A DNA stretch of 64,000 nucleotides, taken from NCBI GenBank assembly GCA_033442325.1, contig JAWQFM010000010.1, positions 879,727 to 943,726 of the forward strand. Direction: 5' to 3'. A model generated the notes under the pieces. The model saw only the letters and a program-made list of their open reading frames with translations. It was not told where the DNA came from and did not search any database. Shown one piece after another: positions 18,985 to 34,712 of the stretch. Both the position numbers and the translations under genes were made by a program. The DNA is from Salpingoeca rosetta. Taxonomy: Eukaryota; Protista; Choanoflagellata. Within the stretch, counting starts at the first letter, position 1, and every line of letters begins with the position of its first letter.

Positions 18985-21660
18985 TGCATGCTAACTTTGC
19001 TGCCACCGGGCGTCAGGCCTAACCCTCCCCCGCCCACGGCTCGTTCCACCACCCTTCTCACCGCTTCCCTTGCCGCTTCCCTCATCCTCCCCACGTCCCC
19101 CGCATCACGTCCGGTAGACGGCCCAAGGCGCTGCTCGGTTGGAATACTATGCTGAGACAAACAAGGCTGCGCGCGGCGTGATTGACCTGCGCACGTGCAT
19201 CTCCATTGAGGAGGCGCACCACGAGCCAGAGAAGAGCCGGTACAACTTTCGCATCGTCACACAGGGTCGCACCTACACACTGCAGGCGCCGTCCTACGAT
19301 GAGATGAAGGAGTGGATGAAGGTGATTTGTGACGAGGTCTTCCCACCAGATGATGGCCGTGCCAAGACAGCAACCCTCCCCAAGCAGCAGCCACCAGCCA
19401 TGGCCGCGCGCGCCCAGCTTGCCGTGCCCACACAGGATGCTCCGCGCCGCACCTCCATCTCCTTCAAGCGCCGCCCCGTCGTCGCGCCCGGCCCCCGCGC
19501 AAAGCCGCATCATCCGCAGCCCTCGCCGTCCTGCCCCTGGCTCTACGGCAAGATTTCCCGCCAACAGACCGAGAGCCTTCTCGCCGACTATGGCCTGCAG
19601 GACGGGCTGTTCCTGGTGCGTGAGAGCTCGCAGCCGGGCGCATTTGCCATCTCGGTCTGCTACAAGGGCAAGGTTGTCCATCACCTCGTTCGCCCTCTCC
19701 CCACAGGCACATTCCAAGTCAACGAGCACGAATGCGGCGAGTGCACGTCACTTGACGAGGTGCGCCGGCGCTGCTGATGCAATTATTTTACCTGAAGCTG
19801 TTGTTGTTGTTGTTGTTGTTGTTGTTATTGTTGTTGTTGCTGTTGTTGCTGTTGTTGCTGTTTGTTGTTGTTGTTGTTGCGGTGGTGGTGGTGACAGAGA
19901 TGTCCACTCCATATCCCCACACGCACTCACTCACTCGCTCACTCGCACGCACAAACGCGTCCCCCTTTTGCTCACTCCCTTCCCTTTCTTTTCTCTGACA
20001 GGTGATTGACTATTTGGAAACGCCGAAAGGCCCGCCACTGAACTGGCGATACGAGCTGAAGGTGTGCCCGAAGACATACGATGAGCAGCAGACTGGTGGT
20101 GCGGACAAACCCCCCGCCGAGATGCCGCCGCTGCCGCCCAGAACGGACGGGGTCCAGAACGCCACCGACCCCGCAGGCAGCGGGCGCTCGTTTCCAGCCA
20201 CACTCCTCAACGTGCGCTCCACAAACCCGCTGTCCGTGGCGCAGGGGGCGCCGTGCATGGTGCGGATAGGTGCGGGCGCCGTGACGCTGGTGGACTCAAC
20301 CACATCTCTCGATGCCTGTACCTGGCCAATCACATCCATCTTCGACTTTGGTGTTGAGCCGGCGCAAGGGTCGTTCTTCCTGCGGTCCAACGACGACCAG
20401 TGTGGCGGCGAGTTCCACTTTCAGAGCCAATCGGCCTTTGACATGCTCGCTCTCCTTCGCCAGCAGCTGCCGCCCATGTCCCGCCAGGCATCCGTCAAGC
20501 CGCCCGTCGCAAAGTCCGTTCCAAATGGCACATGCTTTCCTGCTCGTTTGTTTGGTTGTTTGGTTGTGAGTGTGTTTGTGAGTGTTTGTTTGTTTGTTTG
20601 TTTGTTTACATGTGTGTGTATACGTGCGTTTACATATGTATTCAAACAAACGTGACGTGGCTCTCACGCTCGCGCCGTGCCACTTCCTGTTTGGCGTCTG
20701 GCTTGGTTAGGAAGCCGCCGCCACGCCCTGGCAAGACGGCGACACTTCCCAAGCACGCCGCCATTGGTGCGCTCATTGTTCCAACGTGTGTGTGCAGGGA
20801 CATTTGCTCTGTCTGCACGAGCTGCCTAGCATGTTCTGCCGTAACCATGCTTCCTTACGTACCCTCTAACATACAAGCACACGCATGTGCCCTCTCTTCC
20901 CCCCCCCCCCAAACACACATACACACACACACACACACGCTCTGTCTCTCTCAAACCAACACACAGCTGAGGAGCCTGGCAGCCAGTACGAAAAGCCGAT
21001 TGACGCGGCAGAGATGATGAAGCCGGACACAAGCAAACCCATGCCGCCACCCATTACGGCAGAGAAGCCGAGTGCATCCGCGCTGAAGAACGACTCGCTG
21101 AAGCAGAGCCTCGCTGGCGTTCTCCAGGGCCAGGCCGAGACGCTGCGCTCCGGCGGGCCACGCGCACCGCTCAGGCGCCCAGAGTCATACAGTCAGTTGC
21201 CCTGTGTTTGCTGTGTTTGTATGTATCTGTGTGTGTGTGTGTGTCTTTTTGTAGGTATTGTGGTTCTGTTGCGCATTGTCATATCAGCTCCTCCTTTCAC
21301 CAACTCACCCGCATTCCAATCTTCCTTCCCCCCTGCCCTCCTGCGCCCTTCCTCTTCCCCTTCCCGCTTCGCCAGTTGAGCCGGATGCTGATGCGGCGAC
21401 ACCAACAGCGGCCGCGACATCGTCGTCCTCATCAAAGCGCACGAGCGTTGCCGATATCGGCGTGGCCATCCCCGGTGTTGGCGCATTTGACATTACAAAG
21501 GCCCGCTCCGGCCTCAAGAAGACACAGGCACAGCAGCAACCAGAAGGTGGGGGCTGGCATTATCGCGTCGTGTGTGTGTGTGTGTGTGTGTGTGTTTGTT
21601 TGTTTGTGTGTGTGTGTACTTGTGTGTGTGTGTACTTGTGTGTGTGTGTGTGTGTTTGTT

Positions 21661-21707
<47 letters not shown>

Positions 21708-22227
21708 GTGTCTCCCTGCGTGGTTCATTGTGTGCACCTGCTCCCGCTGCGCACGGTACTCCACAGCTCATCACCGTCCCAACCTTCCATACAACGCAGC
21801 GATTGCGGAGGAGCAAGAAGAGCCTGCAGCGGAAGACCCGTCACAGCAGCAACCGCAGCAACCGCAGGAGGCTGTGCGGCCTGCACTGACCCCGCAGACG
21901 GCGGTGGATGCGGAGGACATGGGCGAGGAGTACCTTGCTGGGTGCGACTTCACCCCGGGCCCAGAAGCCGTCGACAGGCTGGCGTTTGAGGAGGGACAGA
22001 TTATTCTCATCCTGAAGAAGCCCAACGAAAACTGGTGGCTTGGCCGCCTCGGCGACAAGGAGGGGTGGGTGCCGGCGTCGTTTATGGATCCCTTGGACGC
22101 CGACCCGATGCTCGACGCCATGGATGAGGACCCGGCAATAGCGCAGGCGATGGCGGCGGTGCAGAACGCAGACGCCGCGCTGCAGCGACTCGGCAGCCGT
22201 GCACAAGAGCTCTCCCTCAACCAGTAG
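18815..22227 (+). CDS. Multidomain phosphotyrosine adaptor: Gab-like PH, SH2, IRS/DOK-type PTB-like, Pro-rich region, SH3
   Basis: PH: IVKQGWLRKSPP...AWKKRYF...RTYTLQAPSYDEMKEWMKVI. SH2: PWLYGKISRQQTESLL...GLFLVRES. PTB-like: VTLVDSTTSLDACTWPITSIFDFG...GEFHFQS. SH3: CDFTP...LAFEEGQIILILKKPNENWWLGRLGDKEGWVPASFM. All junctions checked are GT-AG and in frame. Confidence 0.85.
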
Positions 22228-27929: not shown

Positions 27930-30900
27930 TCAGCAAGATGAGCAGATGACGGGGCAGTCGATAAACTTCACGCCTGCGCCAGCACAAACACAGGTAGCGT
28001 TGAAGCCGCGGCAACGCACACTGATAAGGGCCGAGTTGTACTGTGTCAAGTCCACGACCCCGCCAACATGAGCCAGCGAGCCAAAGTCCACCTCAATCAG
28101 CGCCGGGTTCCCCTTCAGTTGCAGACTACCCCCAATGTTCGTAACGCCACCAAGGTCCACCCGCGTCAGCGAAGAGCACTGTTGCAGAACCACATCCCCA
28201 CCAATGTCGCCCAGCAATGCAAAGTCAGCGCGTACGCTGCGAACACTGCCAAAGTCCACGCTGGTGAGGGAGGAGCACTGCGAGATGTCAACATCTCCGC
28301 CAATGCTGTCCACCGACGCAAAGCTAACGTTGCTCAGCATGCCCAGGCTGCTCAGCTGAACGCTCCCGCCTACACCCGTGAGAGCTCCAAAGTCAATCGT
28401 TGTCAGCTCATGTGCTGTCTGGAGGTGCAGGTCGCCCCCAATACGGCCGATGGAGGTGAGGTGGATGGCTGGCAGCGCCAGGGCAACTTGAAGGCTTAAG
28501 CTTCCGCCAATCGCAGCCAGGGAGCCAAACGATATCTGCGTCAGCTGTTGCATCTGCGACAGCAACAGGTCACCACCTATCATCTCCAGTGTGCCCAAGT
28601 CAAGGGTCTTCAACACGCTGTCACTGCTCAGGTCCAGATCGCCACCAATGGCGGTGAGCGTGGCAAATGTGATGCTTTGCACGTCAGGTTCGTGGTTGAG
28701 GTACAGCGTGCCGTTGACGCTGCCCAGAGAAGCATCTTGGAAGGCTGACTTGCCAGCCAGGCTGATACCCAGACTGCTGTTGATGTGCAGCTGGCTGACC
28801 GACTCCAGCACCTGCACGTCGATGTACAGCGTGCTGCCAACCTCCGGCAGGGCGTGAAAGTCAAGGCTTGGCAGCGCATCGTTGTGCGACACGTCCAGGT
28901 CGCCCCCGACATGTGTGACTTGCCCAAAGCTCACGCTCTGAAAGCGGTTGTGGTCCAGACGCAACGCCCCGCCAACGCGTGTCAGCTCCCCAAAGTCAAC
29001 TTGCGTGAGATCGTTAGACTCCAGGCGCAAGTCGCCACCAATGTCCCGCAAGCGGCTGCCCAGATCAAGCATCTGCAGCGCAGTCTTGGTGACGGCCAAG
29101 CTGCCGTTGACTCGCAGCAGGTTGGGAAAGTTCATGGCAGTGAGCGCATTGTAAGTCACGGAGAGATCGCCTCCAATTTCCCGCAGTAGTCCGGTGTCAA
29201 GGCCGTCCAGGCTGTTGGCGTCCAAGAGCACACCGCCACCCACTCGCGTCAGCATACCAAAGTCAACGTCGTTCAGAGCGCCGTTGTTGGTCAGGATAAG
29301 GTCCCCTCCCACTTCAGCAACGTTGCCAGCATCAAAGGCCTGCAGAATGTTGGCTTGAAGGAGCAGGCTGCCGCCAATCTTCGACAAGGGGCCGAAAGTG
29401 ACCAAGGTCAGGCTGTTGGCTTGGAGATCAAGGTCCCCGGCAATGTGGTCAAAGGCCGAGATGAAGATGTAGAGACTGCCCTGATTCTGCTCGATGGCGA
29501 CGCTGCTGTTGAAGTCGAGGTTGCTTGCGGATGACAGCGCCACTTCCGGCAGTCGTACGCTCCCTCGGAAGGGAGGCAGTACCGAAAAGTCAAACGTGCT
29601 CAGAGCCGCGTTCTCGTCCAGGGTTAGCTCCCCAAGCACGTACTGCAGCTTGCCAAACTTGAACATGCTCACACTCGTTGCGCTCAAATCCACGTCATCG
29701 CCCACGAACGCCAGCGAGCCAAAGTCAATGGAGCCGAGTGGGTTGTTTTGGAGCTTGAAAGACCCAGCCACCCGCTCGAGCGAACCCACGGTGAGAAACT
29801 CGAACGAGTTGGACGACAGATCAAACCCGCCACCAACGGCAGTGAGCGTACCAAAGGAGATGCCAGAGAGCTTGTTTTCCCTCAGCGTCAGCGAGCCCCC
29901 GACCTGCGCGAGCTTGGGGAAGGAGATGGTTTCCAGCTCATTGGCCTCCGCCGTAAAGTCGCGGCCAATGAGCGACAGCGGACCAAGGCTGAGGGTGGCA
30001 ATGTCGTTGCCGCTGATGTCCACGCTGCCACCCACCGTCAACACCTCGCCAAAGCTCAGGGTGGCCAGCTTGTTGGAGTTCAGCAGGAGGTCTCCGCCCA
30101 CTTGAGTGACACTGCCAAAGTTGACAGTGCACAGGTCATTGTCGGAAAGGTTGATGTGCTCGCCCACGCTGGTGAGCTGCCCAAAGTCAATAGACGTGAG
30201 CTCGTTGGCGGGGATGTGGATGCTCCCGTCCACGTGTTTGAGATTGCCCAGGCTGAGACGCGTCAGCCGGCTGCCGTCCAGGCGCAGGCTCCCACCCAGG
30301 TCAGTCACGTTGCCAAGACTCATGTTTCTGAGGTTTGGGTTGGAAGAGGCGACAATGTCGCCCCGGACATGCGTCAGGTTCTGCAAGTCAACGCTGCCGA
30401 GGTCGTCGTTGCTCGACAAGATCAGAGAGCCGTTGATGAACGCCAAGGCACCGTCAAACGCAAGGTTGCTGAAGGCGTTCTGGGTGAGATCCAGATCACC
30501 CGCGGTGCGCACCAGGGCATCGCCAAAGTCGATGATCGAAATGCTGTTGCTGCTGGCATCGATGTCACCGCCCGCGTGCTGCAGGGACGCAAAGGACAGC
30601 GACGTGAGCAGGTTGTGCTGCAGATACAAGCCGCCGCCAACGCTGGTGAGCGCAGCAAGGTCGAGGGCCGTCAGGTCGTTGGAGGAGAGGTAAACATCGC
30701 CGCCAACAGCCGCGACCTGGCCAAAGCTGAAGCTTGGGAGATGGTTGCGGTGCGCGGAGAGATGTCTGCCGACGCTGGTCAGCGCCCCAAGCGACACCTG
30801 AGTGATGGCGTTGAATGCAAACGAAACATCGCCGTTAACTCTGCTCAACTGTGGGAAGTCAATGCTCGGCAGGTTGTTGTTGTCCAGCAAGATGCTGCCT

Positions 30901-33900
30901 TGCACGTCCAGAAGCAGGTCACATGTGACACCGGTGAGCTGGTTCGAGTTGAGCCGCACGCTGCCGGACACGCGGGCAAGGCGTGGGATGTCCAGGCTGG
31001 TGAGCGCGTTGAACCGCAGGTCAAGGTCACCGCCGACGCTGTCCAGGTTGGTGAGGGTGATGTTGGCGATGTTGGTGTGGCGAACGAGAAAGGCGGCCCC
31101 CACCGAGCGCAGTAGACCGAGGTCGACCGACACCACCTCGTTCACGCTCAGATCCAGCTCGCCTTCCACCGTCACCAATCCCGTGAGGTCCAAAGCCGCG
31201 AGGCGGTTGAAGCTCAAGTCGAGGTTACCGCGCACCTCGCTGATGGCTGAGAGGCTGGCCCTGGTGAGCGCATTCCGTTGCAGATACACGTGCCGCACTA
31301 TGCTCGAGAGGGCATCCAGCGCCAGACTGGGCAGCTTGGCGTTGTCGTGGATGTGGATGTCCACAAACACGGTCGTCAGGCCATCCATGCGGAGATCAAC
31401 CAGGGCTGCATTGTCGGTGATGTACACGGACGCCTCCACGGTCAACAGGGCAGATGTGTCGATGAGGGTGAGCTGCGGGTTGCGCTGCACGCGCAAGTCT
31501 TCAAACACATCGTGCAGGGCGGGAAAGCTGAGCGTAGAGAGGTAGTCGTTGTCGCTGATGCTCAGTTGTGTCGCATCGTCCAGACTGGTGGCCGTGATAG
31601 CCGTGGCTGCGGTGTGTGCAACTCGCAGGGAGCGAACGCTGGTCACACCGCCCAAGTTGATGTGTGCGATTGGGCTGTGCTCAATGACGAGTTGTTCCAA
31701 GATGCGCAGCATGGAGCCAAAGTTGATGCTGCTGATCTTGTTGGGCGACTCGGGCGTGCCGGACACCAGAAGGGAGCCCTGCATGTACTCGATGTCGCCA
31801 AAGCTGAGGGCCATGAGGGCATGCATGCTGGCTGTGATGGTGACATCACCGGTCAGCACGCCAGAGCGGATGCTGAAGCTGGTCGTGCCCACCCCATAAA
31901 CCTTGCCCCCAACCTCTGACAATCGCCCAACGTGGAAGGACTGCAGCGGCAGGCCGCGCAAGTCGACGTCGCCGCCAACGGCAGTCAGCGTGTCAAGCTG
32001 CACAGATGCGGGACGCGTGCCCACAACGCGCAAGCTGCCATTAACACGCTGCAAGCTGTCGAATAGCAGCTCCGTTGTGTCCGCCCCAACATCCACGTGC
32101 ACGTTGCCTGCCATGTCTTGAAGCTGAGCGCGGGAAAGCGTGAAGAAATCAAGGAAGACGGTGCCGTTGGGGGCAAGCGCCTGGCCGAGCACGAGTTGCG
32201 TCAGGTTGGCGTTGCCGCGCACGTCAATCACGTCAAACGCACCCGTGATGTCAGCCAGATCCAGCACCTCCAGCGCACACGACGAGAGGTTGAGTGCTGT
32301 TGGCGTGCCCTGCGCGTTGTTGAGGGTGAAGGAGGCGCAGCCGAGATCAACGGCCCTGGGCACGTTATCCCCAGCATGGGAGACGCGTAGGTGCTTGATG
32401 GGGTTGCCTGACAGGCGAGCGCCACCAGCAGAGGGTGGAAGCTGACCGACATCGATGGAGGTGAGGGCGTTGTTTTCCAAATCAACGCTGTCGCCCACGA
32501 AGACGAGCTGCCCAAAGCGCACGCGGGTGATGGCGTTGTCGCGAAGGCTGATAAATCCGCCCAACAGGGTGACTTGACCCAAGTCTACCTCTGTCAGCGC
32601 GCCATTGGCAGCTGTGATACCACCACCTATGCTCGTCAGGTGTGGGCCGAGATCAAGCGTTTGTGCGAGAGGCGACACTGAGATGGAGCCAGTGACACTG
32701 CGCAGGCGGTAAAACTCGTCGCAGCAGCACGAGGTGACAGCAGCAACCTCACAGGGCGCGGCTGCTGCAATGGCTTGACGCGATGTTATGCTGCTGCAGT
32801 CGAGCACATCAGTGCTGATGCCAGAGCAGAGCTGTGTCGTTGTTGTCGTTGTGGTTGCGGTAGTTGACAGACCTGACTGTGCCGTGCTGGTGGTAGTCGG
32901 CAATGTGGTGGTGGGCGCGGTGGTGCTGTTTGATTTGGACTTGCTGGTGGCAGCGGGCCCAGTTGAGGTGATGGCAATGGGAACAGCGACGGCAGCAGCC
33001 ACAATTAACGCAACGACGATGCCGACGAGGAGCAGACGCTTGCTCGATCTGCCCTTTGACACGGCCACCTGCTCCGTCGTGGTCTCTGAGCCCAGGGCCG
33101 TGAAGTCCTTGTGCAGGGGCCGCATCATCAGGTGCTGGCCCTCCTTGCCTTGTCTGTGTCCCAGCGCAGAGAGCAGCTGCGCATCGTCCGTCGAGGCTTC
33201 GCCGTACACGGAGAAGTCGCCCAACCCGACCTGGTCGTACGTCTCCTCTTGATGGACTCCTCTACTTACGGGCGTCAAATATGTTCGGCCCGCAGCACCA
33301 GTGGTGGTGTCTGTGGTGGTCGATGGGGTGGCATCAGCTGTGCCATACACTTGAAAGTTTCCCGGGTCAGGCGTATCGTACGCGGGCTTGTCTTCTTTGC
33401 TGCTGGGGTTGGTCGCTGTGGTGGTGGTGGCTGTACCGGGTTTCTGCTGCTGTGTGGACTCTGTGCCGTACACATCAAAGTCGCCCAAGCCCGCGGTTTC
33501 GTAGGTGTTGTCGGCTTCCACGTTGGTGGCCGCAGTCACTTCCAAGTAGTCACCGCTGCTGTTGCCGTTGCTGTCATCGGGGTCGGCCGTGTTGCTGTTG
33601 CTGCTGCTGCTGCTGCTGTGGGCCGCAGTGCCTATGATCGCGCTGGTGTTTGTGTTCGTGTTGGTGGTCGCGCCAGCAGCGGCAGGGTTTGGTCGCACGG
33701 CCTCATACGTGGCGTTGAACAAGTCTCTTTGCTCAAATGTGTCAGCAGGCTCCAAGTATGTGCGCTGCGAGGCAGGTACCTGAACCGTGTGTGTGTGAGT
33801 GTGTGAGTGTGTGAGTGAGTGTGTGAGTGAGTGTGTGAGTGAGTGAGTGAGTGAGTGTGTGAGTGAGTGTTTGTGTGTGTGTGTGAATGAGTGTGAATGA

Positions 33901-34712
33901 GTGCGAGTGAGTGAGTGTGAGTGAGTGTGTGTGTGTGTGAGTGAGTGTGAGTGAGTGAGTGTGTGTGACAGTGTTTGTGACGTGCCTGCAGGCAAGAACC
34001 GAATGACAACAGCAAGTAGACCACTGACCGGCTGCTCCTGCTGTTGTCGTTGCTGCTGCTGCTGCTGTAGCGGTGCCTGCCATCCAAATTGCCGGCTGCT
34101 GTTGGCAGGCACAATCGCCTGGTTGAAGAGACATGAGTTAGAAGTAAGCGTATGTGAGTATGCGAGCCTTGTTTTGTGTGTGTGTGTGTGTGTGTGTGCA
34201 GGAAAGAAATGATCGCCGAACACTGCGTATGTGAGACGAATGCCAATACGCACCATATGTACTTGTTCACACACACATACACACACACACACACACACCT
34301 GCAGCTTTGAGATGATGGCGTCGATGAGCTGCGAGGGAATGGCTGTTGTTGGGCTTGGCAAGGTGTAATGTGCACGCGCGTCTGGGAGGCGCTTGCGCAC
34401 ATCCCGCGAGGCGAACTTGTCACACATCTTGATGAGAAAGAAGGGCTTGTTGTGTTTGAGGATGGAACGCAGCTGGGCAGCGGAGCTGGCCTTGTTTCGC
34501 GACCGCTTGCCGTAGTCCTTCGTGCCCATGATCACTGCCAGCGTGCATGCAAGCACGGCTGCCGTAGCACTGGATTTGCCACCTCTGCCGTCATCGTCTC
34601 CTGGTGAGAACACGCGCACCCCACGCTGCTCCAATGCAGCCCTCAGTGTTCTCGTGACATCCCCATTCTCATGGCAGGAAAGGAACACATCACAACCAGC
34701 AGTGGAGGCCAT
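27930..34712 (-). CDS. Type II single-pass receptor (~2117 aa): N-terminal TIR-like domain, Tyr-motif linker, TM helix, Thr-rich stalk, Cys cap, ~60 LRR/receptor-L-like repeats, Cys cap
   Basis: Exons 34712-34299, 34118-34029 and 33779-27930, all phase 0 GT-AG. TIR-like CDVFLSC...LRAALEQRGVRVF...CTLAVIMGTKDYG...KPFFLIKMCD. TM LLLVGIVVALIVAAAVAVPIAI (33035-32970) preceded by KGRSSKR. ~22-aa repeats LxxVGGxLxLxxNxLxxxxFG. No signal peptide. Confidence 0.85.
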   Translation of the reverse strand: MASTAGCDVFLSCHENGDVTRTLRAALEQRGVRVFSPGDDDGRGGKSSATAAVLACTLAVIMGTKDYGKRSRNKASSAAQLRSILKHNKPFFLIKMCDKFASRDVRKRLPDARAHYTLPSPTTAIPSQLIDAIISKLQVCVCVCVCVCEQVHMVRIGIRLTYAVFGDHFFPAHTHTHTHKTRLAYSHTLTSNSCLFNQAIVPANSSRQFGWQAPLQQQQQQRQQQEQPVSGLLAVVIRFLPAGTSQTLSHTLTHSHSLTHTHTHSHSLTRTHSHSFTHTHKHSLTHSLTHSLTHSLTHSLTHSHTHTHTVQVPASQRTYLEPADTFEQRDLFNATYEAVRPNPAAAGATTNTNTNTSAIIGTAAHSSSSSSNSNTADPDDSNGNSSGDYLEVTAATNVEADNTYETAGLGDFDVYGTESTQQQKPGTATTTTATNPSSKEDKPAYDTPDPGNFQVYGTADATPSTTTDTTTGAAGRTYLTPVSRGVHQEETYDQVGLGDFSVYGEASTDDAQLLSALGHRQGKEGQHLMMRPLHKDFTALGSETTTEQVAVSKGRSSKRLLLVGIVVALIVAAAVAVPIAITSTGPAATSKSKSNSTTAPTTTLPTTTSTAQSGLSTTATTTTTTTQLCSGISTDVLDCSSITSRQAIAAAAPCEVAAVTSCCCDEFYRLRSVTGSISVSPLAQTLDLGPHLTSIGGGITAANGALTEVDLGQVTLLGGFISLRDNAITRVRFGQLVFVGDSVDLENNALTSIDVGQLPPSAGGARLSGNPIKHLRVSHAGDNVPRAVDLGCASFTLNNAQGTPTALNLSSCALEVLDLADITGAFDVIDVRGNANLTQLVLGQALAPNGTVFLDFFTLSRAQLQDMAGNVHVDVGADTTELLFDSLQRVNGSLRVVGTRPASVQLDTLTAVGGDVDLRGLPLQSFHVGRLSEVGGKVYGVGTTSFSIRSGVLTGDVTITASMHALMALSFGDIEYMQGSLLVSGTPESPNKISSINFGSMLRILEQLVIEHSPIAHINLGGVTSVRSLRVAHTAATAITATSLDDATQLSISDNDYLSTLSFPALHDVFEDLRVQRNPQLTLIDTSALLTVEASVYITDNAALVDLRMDGLTTVFVDIHIHDNAKLPSLALDALSSIVRHVYLQRNALTRASLSAISEVRGNLDLSFNRLAALDLTGLVTVEGELDLSVNEVVSVDLGLLRSVGAAFLVRHTNIANITLTNLDSVGGDLDLRFNALTSLDIPRLARVSGSVRLNSNQLTGVTCDLLLDVQGSILLDNNNLPSIDFPQLSRVNGDVSFAFNAITQVSLGALTSVGRHLSAHRNHLPSFSFGQVAAVGGDVYLSSNDLTALDLAALTSVGGGLYLQHNLLTSLSFASLQHAGGDIDASSNSISIIDFGDALVRTAGDLDLTQNAFSNLAFDGALAFINGSLILSSNDDLGSVDLQNLTHVRGDIVASSNPNLRNMSLGNVTDLGGSLRLDGSRLTRLSLGNLKHVDGSIHIPANELTSIDFGQLTSVGEHINLSDNDLCTVNFGSVTQVGGDLLLNSNKLATLSFGEVLTVGGSVDISGNDIATLSLGPLSLIGRDFTAEANELETISFPKLAQVGGSLTLRENKLSGISFGTLTAVGGGFDLSSNSFEFLTVGSLERVAGSFKLQNNPLGSIDFGSLAFVGDDVDLSATSVSMFKFGKLQYVLGELTLDENAALSTFDFSVLPPFRGSVRLPEVALSSASNLDFNSSVAIEQNQGSLYIFISAFDHIAGDLDLQANSLTLVTFGPLSKIGGSLLLQANILQAFDAGNVAEVGGDLILTNNGALNDVDFGMLTRVGGGVLLDANSLDGLDTGLLREIGGDLSVTYNALTAMNFPNLLRVNGSLAVTKTALQMLDLGSRLRDIGGDLRLESNDLTQVDFGELTRVGGALRLDHNRFQSVSFGQVTHVGGDLDVSHNDALPSLDFHALPEVGSTLYIDVQVLESVSQLHINSSLGISLAGKSAFQDASLGSVNGTLYLNHEPDVQSITFATLTAIGGDLDLSSDSVLKTLDLGTLEMIGGDLLLSQMQQLTQISFGSLAAIGGSLSLQVALALPAIHLTSIGRIGGDLHLQTAHELTTIDFGALTGVGGSVQLSSLGMLSNVSFASVDSIGGDVDISQCSSLTSVDFGSVRSVRADFALLGDIGGDVVLQQCSSLTRVDLGGVTNIGGSLQLKGNPALIEVDFGSLAHVGGVVDLTQYNSALISVRCRGFNATCVCAGAGVKFIDCPVICSSC

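What the first reader, a model, noticed from the sequence alone, without database searches (positions are those of the whole stretch)
33195..33770. Three copies of a paired-tyrosine motif with ITAM-like spacing in the receptor's cytoplasmic linker
Seen: TYETAGLGDFDVYGT, AYDTPDPGNFQVYGT and TYDQVGLGDFSVYGE (consensus Y[ED]xxxxG[DN]FxVYG, 10 residues between the tyrosines), plus single motifs TYLEP, TYEAV, DYLEV and TYLTP. Established: ITAMs have similar Y-to-Y spacing but require YxxL/I, which these lack. Inference: these are kinase substrates and SH2 docking sites (possibly for tandem SH2), so the receptor would combine TIR and phosphotyrosine outputs.
Basis: partly seen in the sequence, partly recalled or inferred. 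Interest (0 to 1): 0.75.

Follow-up and report, generated by a model that had tools for sequence, protein, structure and literature searches.

The report
Tyrosine docking motifs in TIR receptor
A choanoflagellate membrane receptor with a TIR immune-type domain carries ten tyrosine motifs in its disordered inner linker, three of them copies of a paired motif found nowhere else in the genome; they look like phosphotyrosine docking sites, but nothing here shows that they are phosphorylated.

Summary
Three copies of Y[ED]xxxxG[DN]FxVYG lie on the minus strand at 33462-33506, 33339-33383 and 33198-33242, with seven further tyrosine motifs in 192 residues. The second half, G[DN]FxVYG, occurs three times in the 55 Mb genome, all in this gene. 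The copies match as protein, not as DNA.

The gene appears to be from Salpingoeca rosetta. It encodes a reverse-order receptor: a TIR-fold domain, a disordered linker and one membrane helix, then a 1,678-residue repeat ectodomain. The linker is therefore most likely cytoplasmic.

Copy 3 sits at the same juxtamembrane place as YEEI...YACPDAAGFGVYGT in a paralog. Its first tyrosine is kept as Y[DE]x[VIN] in 4 of 6 paralogs. Four paralogs carry an SH2 domain between TIR and linker; this gene does not. The V-Y-G tyrosines resemble the Src substrate peptide core IYGEA.

Best reading (0.5): phosphotyrosine docking motifs. The ITAM or tandem-SH2 idea fails on the required Leu/Ile at +3. No phosphorylation data exist, and no relatives outside this genome were found.

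The scan had already noted this receptor family on other DNA of this genome, but not this paired motif. I class it as a new variant of a known kind, interest 0.42.

The parts
34299..34712 (-). Exon 1: start codon and a TIR-fold domain (138 codons). A GT donor follows at 34298.
   Evidence: Pfam TIR_2 E 0.008, below the cut-off. It is 34-41% identical to at least 30 paralogous exons. AlphaFold2 with 12 paralogs gave pLDDT 75; the top Foldseek hits are RUN1, RPV1, Roq1, RPS4, SARM1 and AbTir TIR domains at E 2e-6 to 1e-4.
34119..34298 (-). Putative intron 1: a (CA)n microsatellite of 180 nt with GT..AG ends, stop-free and a multiple of 3.
   Evidence: Read from the sequence. Paralogs have CA-repeat introns at the same place relative to the public models P0001 and P0003.
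34029..34118 (-). Putative mini-exon 2 (30 codons, Gln-rich). It takes the place of the two SH2 exons of the paralogs.
   Evidence: Splice signals read. tblastn with the SH2 regions of P0001 and P0003 finds nothing between 33780 and 34298. Splicing has not been verified with RNA data.
33780..34028 (-). Putative intron 2: a CACTCA/CA microsatellite. The acceptor is at 33780 or 33765; both choices keep the frame.
   Evidence: Sequence.
33195..33779 (-). Tyrosine-motif linker, the start of exon 3. It holds 10 Tyr, is acidic and has a disorder-type composition.
   Evidence: AlphaFold2 gave mean pLDDT 42 and no secondary structure over the motifs.
33747..33764 (-). RTYLEP, a YxxP-type single motif and copy 1 of RTYLxP.
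33696..33710 (-). TYEAV single motif.
33537..33551 (-). DYLEV single motif.
33462..33506 (-). Paired motif copy 1, TYETAGLGDFDVYGT (Y504, Y515).
33339..33383 (-). Paired motif copy 2, AYDTPDPGNFQVYGT (Y545, Y556). Its first tyrosine is also a YDxP site.
   Evidence: This is the best BLASTP match to YACPDAAGFGVYGT of paralog P0003.
33270..33287 (-). RTYLTP, copy 2 of RTYLxP and a YxxP-type motif.
33198..33242 (-). Paired motif copy 3, TYDQVGLGDFSVYGE (Y592, Y603). It is positionally homologous to the motif of paralog P0003.
33036..33197 (-). Juxtamembrane segment conserved across the family (..M.P...D.K.F..E....V.VK.G..KR).
   Evidence: Alignment A2 of seven family members.
32967..33035 (-). 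Single transmembrane helix, LLLVGIVVALIVAAAVAVPIAIT.
   Evidence: Hydrophobicity scan. There are 4 Lys/Arg in the 15 residues on the N-terminal side and 2 on the C-terminal side. The VAVP core is invariant in the family.
27930..32966 (-). Ectodomain: a Thr-rich stalk, a CCCDEFY cysteine knot (32709-32729), about 1,600 residues of receptor-L/LRR-like repeats, a C-terminal Cys cluster and the stop codon.
   Evidence: Pfam Recep_L_domain E 4.8e-15. It has 17 N-x-S/T sequons and 18 Cys, and a large paralog family.

Best explanation
The stretch is the start of the third exon of a single-pass, reverse-order (type II) receptor. The layout is an N-terminal TIR-fold domain, this linker and one membrane helix, then a 1,678-residue repeat ectodomain.

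The linker is an intrinsically disordered, acidic cytoplasmic segment with ten tyrosine-based short linear motifs. The three paired motifs are an expansion inside this gene of an older juxtamembrane element. An SH2-bearing paralog also has that element.

Most likely mechanism (inferred, not shown):
- A Src-type kinase phosphorylates the V-Y-G tyrosines.
- The Y[DE]xx and YxxP tyrosines, once phosphorylated, dock SH2 proteins.
- This member has no SH2 domain of its own, so its partners could include the SH2-bearing TIR receptors of the same family or cytosolic adaptors.
- That would couple phosphotyrosine signalling to TIR-domain assembly.
For: Shown:
- The motifs are real, non-random and unique in the genome.
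- They are conserved as protein but not as DNA.
- The N-terminal exon has a TIR fold.
- There is one transmembrane helix with more positive charge on the linker side, and a Cys- and sequon-rich ectodomain on the other side.
- The linker shows no predicted structure.
- Public models P0001 and P0003 of paralogs start at the TIR domain without a signal peptide. They read TIR, SH2, linker, TM helix, ectodomain.
- The SH2 call in the paralogs has three lines of support:
  - Pfam gives E 0.0016 and 0.015.
  - A profile search of PDB sequences hits the ZAP-70 and SYK SH2 domains at E 0.002.
  - Ten of ten Atlas structure matches are SH2, at TM 0.68-0.76.
- Four paralogs have these SH2 exons.
- P0003 has YEEI and YACPDAAGFGVYGT about 60 residues before its TM helix. 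That is the place of copy 3 here.
- The first tyrosine of copy 3 aligns with YEEI, YDNV, YDY and YEHN in four of six paralogs.
- The genome has at least 110 SH2 matches, several of them tandem, and at least 160 tyrosine-kinase matches.

From papers:
- The peptide AEEEIYGEAEAKKKG is phosphorylated by c-Src, by Monosiga MbSrc1 and by Capsaspora CoSrc2 (PMC7298416). Copy 3 reads SVYGEAS.
- Choanoflagellate membrane proteins with cytosolic YxxP arrays, some with SH2 domains, are described. pYDVP peptides bind the Monosiga Crka1 SH2 domain (PMC5043372). This linker has YLEP, YDTP and YLTP.
Against: - There are no phosphorylation data for this protein or for any S. rosetta tyrosine site.
- There are no RNA data for this gene, and it has no public protein model. 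Exon joins and expression rest on analogy with paralogs.
- No relative outside this genome conserves the linker. A HMMER search of 1.84 billion representatives gave 3 hits, all through the ectodomain start.
- The second tyrosine of the pair is kept in only one paralog.
- The +3 residue after V-Y-G is E or A, not the hydrophobic residue of the best Src peptide.
- Thr precedes five of the seven other tyrosines, which is not a typical kinase preference.
- The linker's Ser/Thr-rich spacers resemble the extracellular stalk.
Confidence: 0.5

Rival explanations
1. ITAM-like module. Each doubly phosphorylated pair binds the two SH2 domains of a Syk/ZAP-70-like or SHP-like tandem-SH2 protein.
For: The spacing of 10 residues between tyrosines lies within the ITAM range of 9-11. 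This follows from the consensus YxxL/I-x6-8-YxxL/I, which is established knowledge. The genome encodes tandem SH2 pairs, for example C7:1976960-1977505 with two SH2 domains in one open frame, and also C23, C12 and C6.
Against: None of the six tyrosines has Leu/Ile at +3. The first tyrosines have A, P and V; the second have E, A and A. The paralog keeps the pair as YACP...VYGT, which is not ITAM-like either. No kinase match was listed next to the C7 tandem pair, but that list is not exhaustive.
Confidence: 0.1
2. Non-phosphorylated sorting or peptide-binding motifs. Examples are YxxΦ signals (YEAV, YLEV, YDQV) read by clathrin adaptors, with the G[DN]FxVYG half bound by some other module. On this reading the array controls trafficking of the receptor and not signalling.
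For: Three tyrosines fit YxxΦ, and the motifs lie in the cytoplasmic tail of a membrane protein. Conservation alone cannot tell phospho-dependent from phospho-independent use.
Against: YxxΦ does not explain the conserved G[DN]FxVYG half or the YxxP sites. The family context is phosphotyrosine-oriented, with SH2 domains in paralogs.
Confidence: 0.15
3. A structural repeat or a neutral remnant. Each unit forms a small beta-hairpin (Y...G-[DN]...Y), or the copies are leftovers of an internal duplication with no signalling role.
For: The same pattern occurs in one bacterial protein family, as ...YEDIYDGNFGVYGQ..., which may sit in a strand-turn-strand context (my reading of the sequence, not tested). 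So the sequence may favour a hairpin. The motif has not been seen outside this genome.
Against: AlphaFold2 gives no structure over the motifs, though this was a single-sequence run and is weak evidence. The spacers have diverged beyond alignment while eight motif positions stay fixed and carry synonymous differences. That argues for selection on the motif. One copy is retained in a paralog whose TIR domain is only 38% identical.
Confidence: 0.17
4. The stretch is not part of a cytoplasmic protein segment. It would be extracellular and mucin-like, or not translated because the TIR exon belongs to another transcript.
For: The Ser/Thr/Asn-rich spacers contain 3 N-x-S/T sequons and resemble the stalk on the other side of the helix. 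There is no RNA evidence and no public model for this gene.
Against: One open frame runs from the TIR exon to the stop codon. Paralog models join TIR, SH2, linker, TM helix and ectodomain in one protein. The juxtamembrane segment is homologous. Positive charges lie on the linker side of the helix.
Confidence: 0.05

Closest known systems
ITAM (immunoreceptor tyrosine-based activation motif, YxxL/I-x6-8-YxxL/I)
   Same: Two tyrosines lie a fixed 10 residues apart in the cytoplasmic part of a kinase-less membrane receptor, and the unit is repeated, as in CD3 zeta.
   Different: No Leu/Ile at +3 of either tyrosine. The conserved G[DN]F core between the tyrosines has no ITAM counterpart. There is no evidence for a Syk-type partner.
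Choanoflagellate transmembrane proteins with cytosolic YxxP arrays, some with SH2 domains (PTSG_05573, 12435, 12436; Monosiga A9VAL3, A9V449; PMC5043372)
   Same: Kinase-less single-pass proteins of the same organism group with several tyrosine motifs in a cytosolic region. This linker has three YxxP sites, including YDTP, which resembles the pYDVP peptides shown to bind Crka1 SH2.
   Different: Those proteins are in the usual orientation with other ectodomains, have no TIR domain and lack the paired G[DN]FxVYG unit.
Reverse-order TIR-SH2 receptor family of S. rosetta
   Same: It shares the TIR-type exon, the juxtamembrane segment, the TM helix with a VAVP core, the CCCDEFY knot and the repeat ectodomain. 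P0003 also shares one copy of the paired motif.
   Different: This member lacks the SH2 exons. It has three copies of the pair plus two RTYLxP sites, and a much longer ectodomain (1,678 residues against about 300-450).
Src-family optimal substrate peptides (AEEEIYGEFEA and AEEEIYGEAEA)
   Same: The second tyrosine of every pair is V-Y-G, and copy 3 reads VYGEA. The YGEA peptide is a substrate of Monosiga MbSrc1 (PMC7298416).
   Different: The acidic run before the tyrosine is missing, and the +3 residue is not hydrophobic.
Nck-type pYDxV sites (nephrin, EPEC Tir), recalled from memory and not tested here
   Same: ETYDQVG in copy 3 fits Y-D-x-V in an acidic context.
   Different: Only one of the ten tyrosines fits. 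I did not check whether S. rosetta has an Nck-type adaptor.
Transmembrane adaptor proteins (LAT, PAG, SCIMP) and tyrosine-phosphorylated Toll-like receptors (PMC9052152)
   Same: In both, disordered cytoplasmic tyrosine arrays link membrane receptors, including TIR receptors, to SH2 proteins.
   Different: In mammals the scaffold and the TIR receptor are separate proteins. Here both would be in one chain, and in the reverse orientation.

Membership tests
ITAM | Two tyrosines with 9-11 residues between them | tested here: met
   All three copies have 10 residues between the tyrosines.
ITAM | Leu or Ile at +3 of both tyrosines | tested here: not met
   The +3 residues are A, P and V for the first tyrosines and E, A and A for the second.
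ITAM | Located in the cytoplasmic part of a membrane receptor subunit | tested here: inconclusive
   Predicted from a single TM helix, the charge bias, a TIR domain on the same side and the paralog models. There is no experimental topology.
ITAM | Phosphorylated by Src-family kinases and bound by a tandem-SH2 kinase | not testable with these tools
   No phosphotyrosine site data for S. rosetta were found.
Choanoflagellate YxxP-array membrane proteins (PMC5043372) | Several YxxP motifs in the cytosolic region of a transmembrane protein | tested here: met
   YLEP, YDTP and YLTP are present. Those proteins carry up to 10 such motifs, so this array is small.
Choanoflagellate YxxP-array membrane proteins (PMC5043372) | Binding of the phosphorylated motifs to a Crk-type SH2 domain | not testable with these tools
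   This needs phosphopeptide binding assays.
Reverse-order TIR-SH2 receptors of S. rosetta | N-terminal TIR-fold domain without a signal peptide | tested here: met
Reverse-order TIR-SH2 receptors of S. rosetta | SH2 domain between the TIR domain and the linker | tested here: not met
   tblastn with the SH2 regions of P0001 and P0003 finds nothing in 33780-34298. Four paralogs have the domain.
Reverse-order TIR-SH2 receptors of S. rosetta | Conserved juxtamembrane segment, single TM helix with a VAVP core, CCCDEFY knot and L-domain/LRR-like repeats towards the C-terminus | tested here: met
Src-family kinase substrate site | Ile/Val/Leu at -1 and Gly/Ala/Glu at +1 of the tyrosine | tested here: met
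   DVYGT, QVYGT and SVYGE. The peptide data are in PMC7298416.
Src-family kinase substrate site | Hydrophobic residue at +3 and an acidic run upstream | tested here: not met
   The +3 residue is E, A or A, and only one acidic residue lies within the four residues upstream.

The most novel reading that the evidence does not exclude
The paired unit is an undescribed two-part phosphotyrosine module: an SH2-docking tyrosine (Y[DE]xx) held a fixed distance from a Src-type priming tyrosine (V-Y-G). Through it, this SH2-less TIR receptor would be captured by the SH2-bearing TIR receptors of the same family. Tyrosine phosphorylation would then drive TIR-domain assembly in a relative of animals that lacks MyD88 and IRAK.
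Probability: 0.12. Interest if true: 0.8.

Novelty: new variant of a known kind. Interest (0 to 1): 0.42.

Why it matters
Choanoflagellates have very large phosphotyrosine toolkits, but almost no kinase substrate or SH2 docking site is known in them. How their many TIR proteins signal without MyD88 or IRAK is also open. Those two proteins were not detected in choanoflagellates (PMC6040629).

This receptor offers a short, sharply defined candidate site set: ten tyrosines and one unique repeated motif. Its sister genes carry the matching reader domain. That makes a link between phosphotyrosine and TIR signalling directly testable with peptides, recombinant SH2 domains and the transfection and genome-editing methods that exist for S. 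rosetta.

If the tyrosines prove unphosphorylated, the finding reduces to a lineage-specific linker repeat of little wider interest.

Tried and rejected
- **Word search for relatives of the linker.** I used the full-length frame with residues 415-660. None of 8,000 scored candidates passed. Low-complexity words probably swamped the candidate list, so this says little.
- **HMMER search of 1.84 billion representatives.** The query was linker, TM helix, stalk and knot. It gave three hits, all through residues 238-359 (the ectodomain start) and none through the linker. Two of the hits (P0001, P0003) match paralog loci of this genome; the third (P0002) was not placed.
- **Word search with the ectodomain start.** It found nothing among proteins of 1,298-4,130 aa. 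The gene therefore appears to have no public model.
- **Metagenome scan with the full paired DNA pattern.** It gave 42 single hits. About 20 come from one bacterial protein family and the rest are chance hits, many with stop codons. None is repeated and none is eukaryote-like.
- **Own-genome search with a 24-residue peptide around copy 1.** It found only itself and copy 3.
- **Looser pattern GxFxVYG.** It gave 18 hits against 9 in the control. Apart from this gene, only C26:962105-962331 has two clustered hits.
- **Profile of 12 TIR exons against PDB sequences.** It gave only weak plant-TIR hits at E 0.06-0.4. The TIR call rests on the fold search.
- **ITIM, ITSM, Grb2 (YxN) and p85 (YxxM) patterns.** I checked these by eye, and none fits.
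- **A short intron at the gtaagt in 33268.** Rejected, because the nearest AG would give only 22 nt.
- **Joining exons.** The exons were searched one by one by reference.
Full report
**What is there**

The window is eukaryotic. It is piece C10:879727-943726 of a 55.4 Mb genome in 68 contigs. The paralog proteins found later and the scan's earlier notes point to the choanoflagellate Salpingoeca rosetta.

One open frame of 2,360 codons runs on the minus strand from 35012 to 27930. Reading the DNA gives this gene structure:
- A start codon at 34712.
- A 138-codon first exon, 34299-34712, followed by a GT donor.
- A 180-nt (CA)n intron.
- A possible 30-codon Gln-rich mini-exon, 34029-34118.
- A CACTCA/CA-repeat intron of 249 or 264 nt.
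- A last exon from 33779 (or 33764) to the stop codon.

Both introns are stop-free and multiples of three, which is why the gene reads as one frame. I did not build or search a joined sequence; each exon was searched by reference.

- The paired motifs lie at 33462-33506 (TYETAGLGDFDVYGT), 33339-33383 (AYDTPDPGNFQVYGT) and 33198-33242 (TYDQVGLGDFSVYGE). Each has 10 residues between its tyrosines.
- The single motifs are RTYLEP (33747-33764), TYEAV (33696-33710), DYLEV (33537-33551) and RTYLTP (33270-33287).
- The linker has 10 Tyr in 192 residues (5.2%), against 0.83% in the ectodomain. It has 14% Asp+Glu, 4% Lys+Arg and 64% Ser/Thr/Asn/Gln/Gly/Pro/Ala.
- No full motif appeared in 200,000 shuffles of the linker.
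- The back-translated G[DN]FxVYG pattern hits the whole genome three times, all here. The reversed control gives one hit.
- At the DNA level the copies are not detectable repeats. Their conserved codons differ at synonymous sites, and the spacers between them do not align. The copies are therefore old and held at the protein level, or arose more than once.

**Which side of the membrane**

- One hydrophobic helix lies at 32967-33035. There are four Lys/Arg in the 15 residues before it and two after it.
- After the helix come a Thr-rich stalk, a CCCDEFY cysteine knot and about 1,600 residues of receptor-L/LRR-like repeats, with 17 N-x-S/T sequons and 18 Cys.
- Before the helix lies the first exon. 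Pfam scores it only weakly as TIR_2 (E 0.008). A profile of 12 paralogous exons gave only weak plant-TIR hits in PDB sequences.
- AlphaFold2 with those 12 sequences gave pLDDT 75. Foldseek placed the model among TIR domains (RUN1, RPV1, Roq1, RPS4, SNC1, SARM1, AbTir) at E 2e-6 to 1e-4 and TM 0.6-0.7.

TIR domains are cytoplasmic, so the linker is most likely cytoplasmic and the protein has its parts in the reverse order of a Toll-like receptor. AlphaFold2 of the linker alone gave pLDDT 42 and no secondary structure over the motifs. That is consistent with disorder, though a single-sequence run is weak evidence.

**Family context**

- The TIR exon has at least 30 paralogs in the genome, and the ectodomain start has many more.
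- Six TIR paralogs show the same order of TIR exon, linker, TM helix and ectodomain.
- The HMMER search of 1.84 billion representatives found only three proteins, all through the ectodomain start. Two of them, P0001 and P0003, are public models of the C8 and C4 paralogs.
- Those models begin at the TIR domain without a signal peptide. Between the TIR domain and the linker they contain an SH2 domain. The support for that call is:
  - Pfam gives E 0.0016 and 0.015.
  - A two-sequence profile hits the ZAP-70 and SYK SH2 domains in PDB at E 0.002.
  - All ten structure matches in the ESM Atlas are SH2 proteins, at TM 0.68-0.76.
- Four paralogs have these SH2 exons. This gene has none.

**Conservation of the tyrosines**

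An alignment of the juxtamembrane parts of seven members shows a shared segment before the helix.
- It places FSVYGEASTD of copy 3 on FGVYGTMSGD of the C4 paralog.
- The first tyrosine of copy 3 (YDQV) aligns with YEEI, YDNV, YDY and YEHN in four of the six paralogs.
- In a pairwise BLASTP, the best match between this linker and P0003 is AYDTPDPGNFQVYGT against VYACPDAAGFGVYGT (E 0.002). The second best runs from copy 3 to the helix (E 0.017).

So the pair predates the split of two genes whose TIR domains are 38% identical, and it was then multiplied here. The second tyrosine is kept in that one paralog only. Outside this genome I found nothing. The protein libraries gave no linker relatives. 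A metagenome scan with the full pattern gave 42 single hits. About half come from one bacterial protein family and the rest are chance.

**Mechanism**

None of this is shown directly. The inference rests on five points.
1. The linker has the make-up of a disordered scaffold with islands of conservation.
2. The genome has at least 110 SH2 matches, several tandem, and at least 160 tyrosine-kinase matches.
3. The second tyrosine of every pair is V-Y-G, and copy 3 reads VYGEA. The peptide AEEEIYGEAEAKKKG is phosphorylated by c-Src, by Monosiga MbSrc1 and by Capsaspora CoSrc2 (PMC7298416).
4. The other tyrosines read Y[DE]xx or YxxP. Choanoflagellate membrane proteins with cytosolic YxxP arrays, some with SH2 domains, are described, and pYDVP peptides bind the Monosiga Crka1 SH2 domain (PMC5043372).
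5. Sister genes place an SH2 domain next to the equivalent linker.

The most economical reading is a phosphotyrosine docking array. Since this member lacks an SH2 domain, it could be a partner for SH2-bearing members or for cytosolic adaptors.

The ITAM comparison fails on a defining feature: there is no Leu/Ile at +3. The remaining rivals are non-phospho sorting signals, a hairpin-type structural repeat and a wrong topology or gene model. All remain open at lower odds.

**Known or new**

- Tyrosine-motif arrays in kinase-less choanoflagellate membrane proteins are known (PMC5043372).
- TIR and SH2 co-occurrence in choanoflagellates was noted in PMC6040629.
- The reverse-order TIR-SH2 receptor family had been noted earlier in this scan on other pieces of this genome.
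- Three things are new here: the paired motif itself, its triplication in an SH2-less member, and its partial conservation at a fixed juxtamembrane place.
- No S. rosetta phosphotyrosine site data turned up in the paper library.

**Limits**

- There are no RNA data and no public model of this gene.
- The motif comparisons with nephrin and Tir sites come from memory.

Noticed in passing
window:19139-22227 (+): Exons encode PH and SH2 domains (19139-19777; SH2 E 2e-14), a weak IRS-type PTB domain (20002-20655) and an SH3 domain (21208-22227). This is a phosphotyrosine adaptor gene 11-14 kb from the receptor. Nothing suggests a functional link beyond proximity.
   Followed up: partly
G000:C26:962105-962124 and 962312-962331 (-), outside the window: Two matches to GGF[DE]VYG lie 207 nt apart on one strand. 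They are the only other clustered look-alikes of the second half of the motif in the genome. No TIR or ectodomain hit was listed nearby.
   Followed up: no
window:33780-34298 (-): Both introns of the receptor gene are CA or CACTCA microsatellites, multiples of three and stop-free. The whole gene therefore reads as one 2,360-codon frame. Paralogs have CA-repeat introns at the same places.
   Followed up: partly
window:27930-34712 (-): This receptor gene has no counterpart in the two large protein libraries, although its paralogs (P0001, P0003) do. It may be unannotated in the public gene set, perhaps because microsatellites broke the older assembly.
   Followed up: partly
L033 (G000:C4:547871-553893), public model P0003: The paralog linker carries a perfect Src-SH2-type YEEI, an acidic VVYDVGRADE motif also present in the C35 paralog (DVYDLGRADE), and one copy of the paired motif. 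The C35 paralog has two LYDNVE (Grb2-type YxN) sites.
   Followed up: partly
L061-L102 (metagenome contigs): About 20 high-GC bacterial contigs share a protein segment ...LELSGGVLYEDIYDGNFGVYGQGLVNL..., which matches the paired pattern by chance. From the sequence alone it may sit in a strand-turn-strand context; I did not test this or identify the family.
   Followed up: no
G000:C35:628645-628902 (+), outside the window: A tyrosine-kinase match lies about 1.2 kb from the end of the C35 reverse-order TIR receptor paralog, whose ectodomain is at 631164-634037 (-).
   Followed up: no
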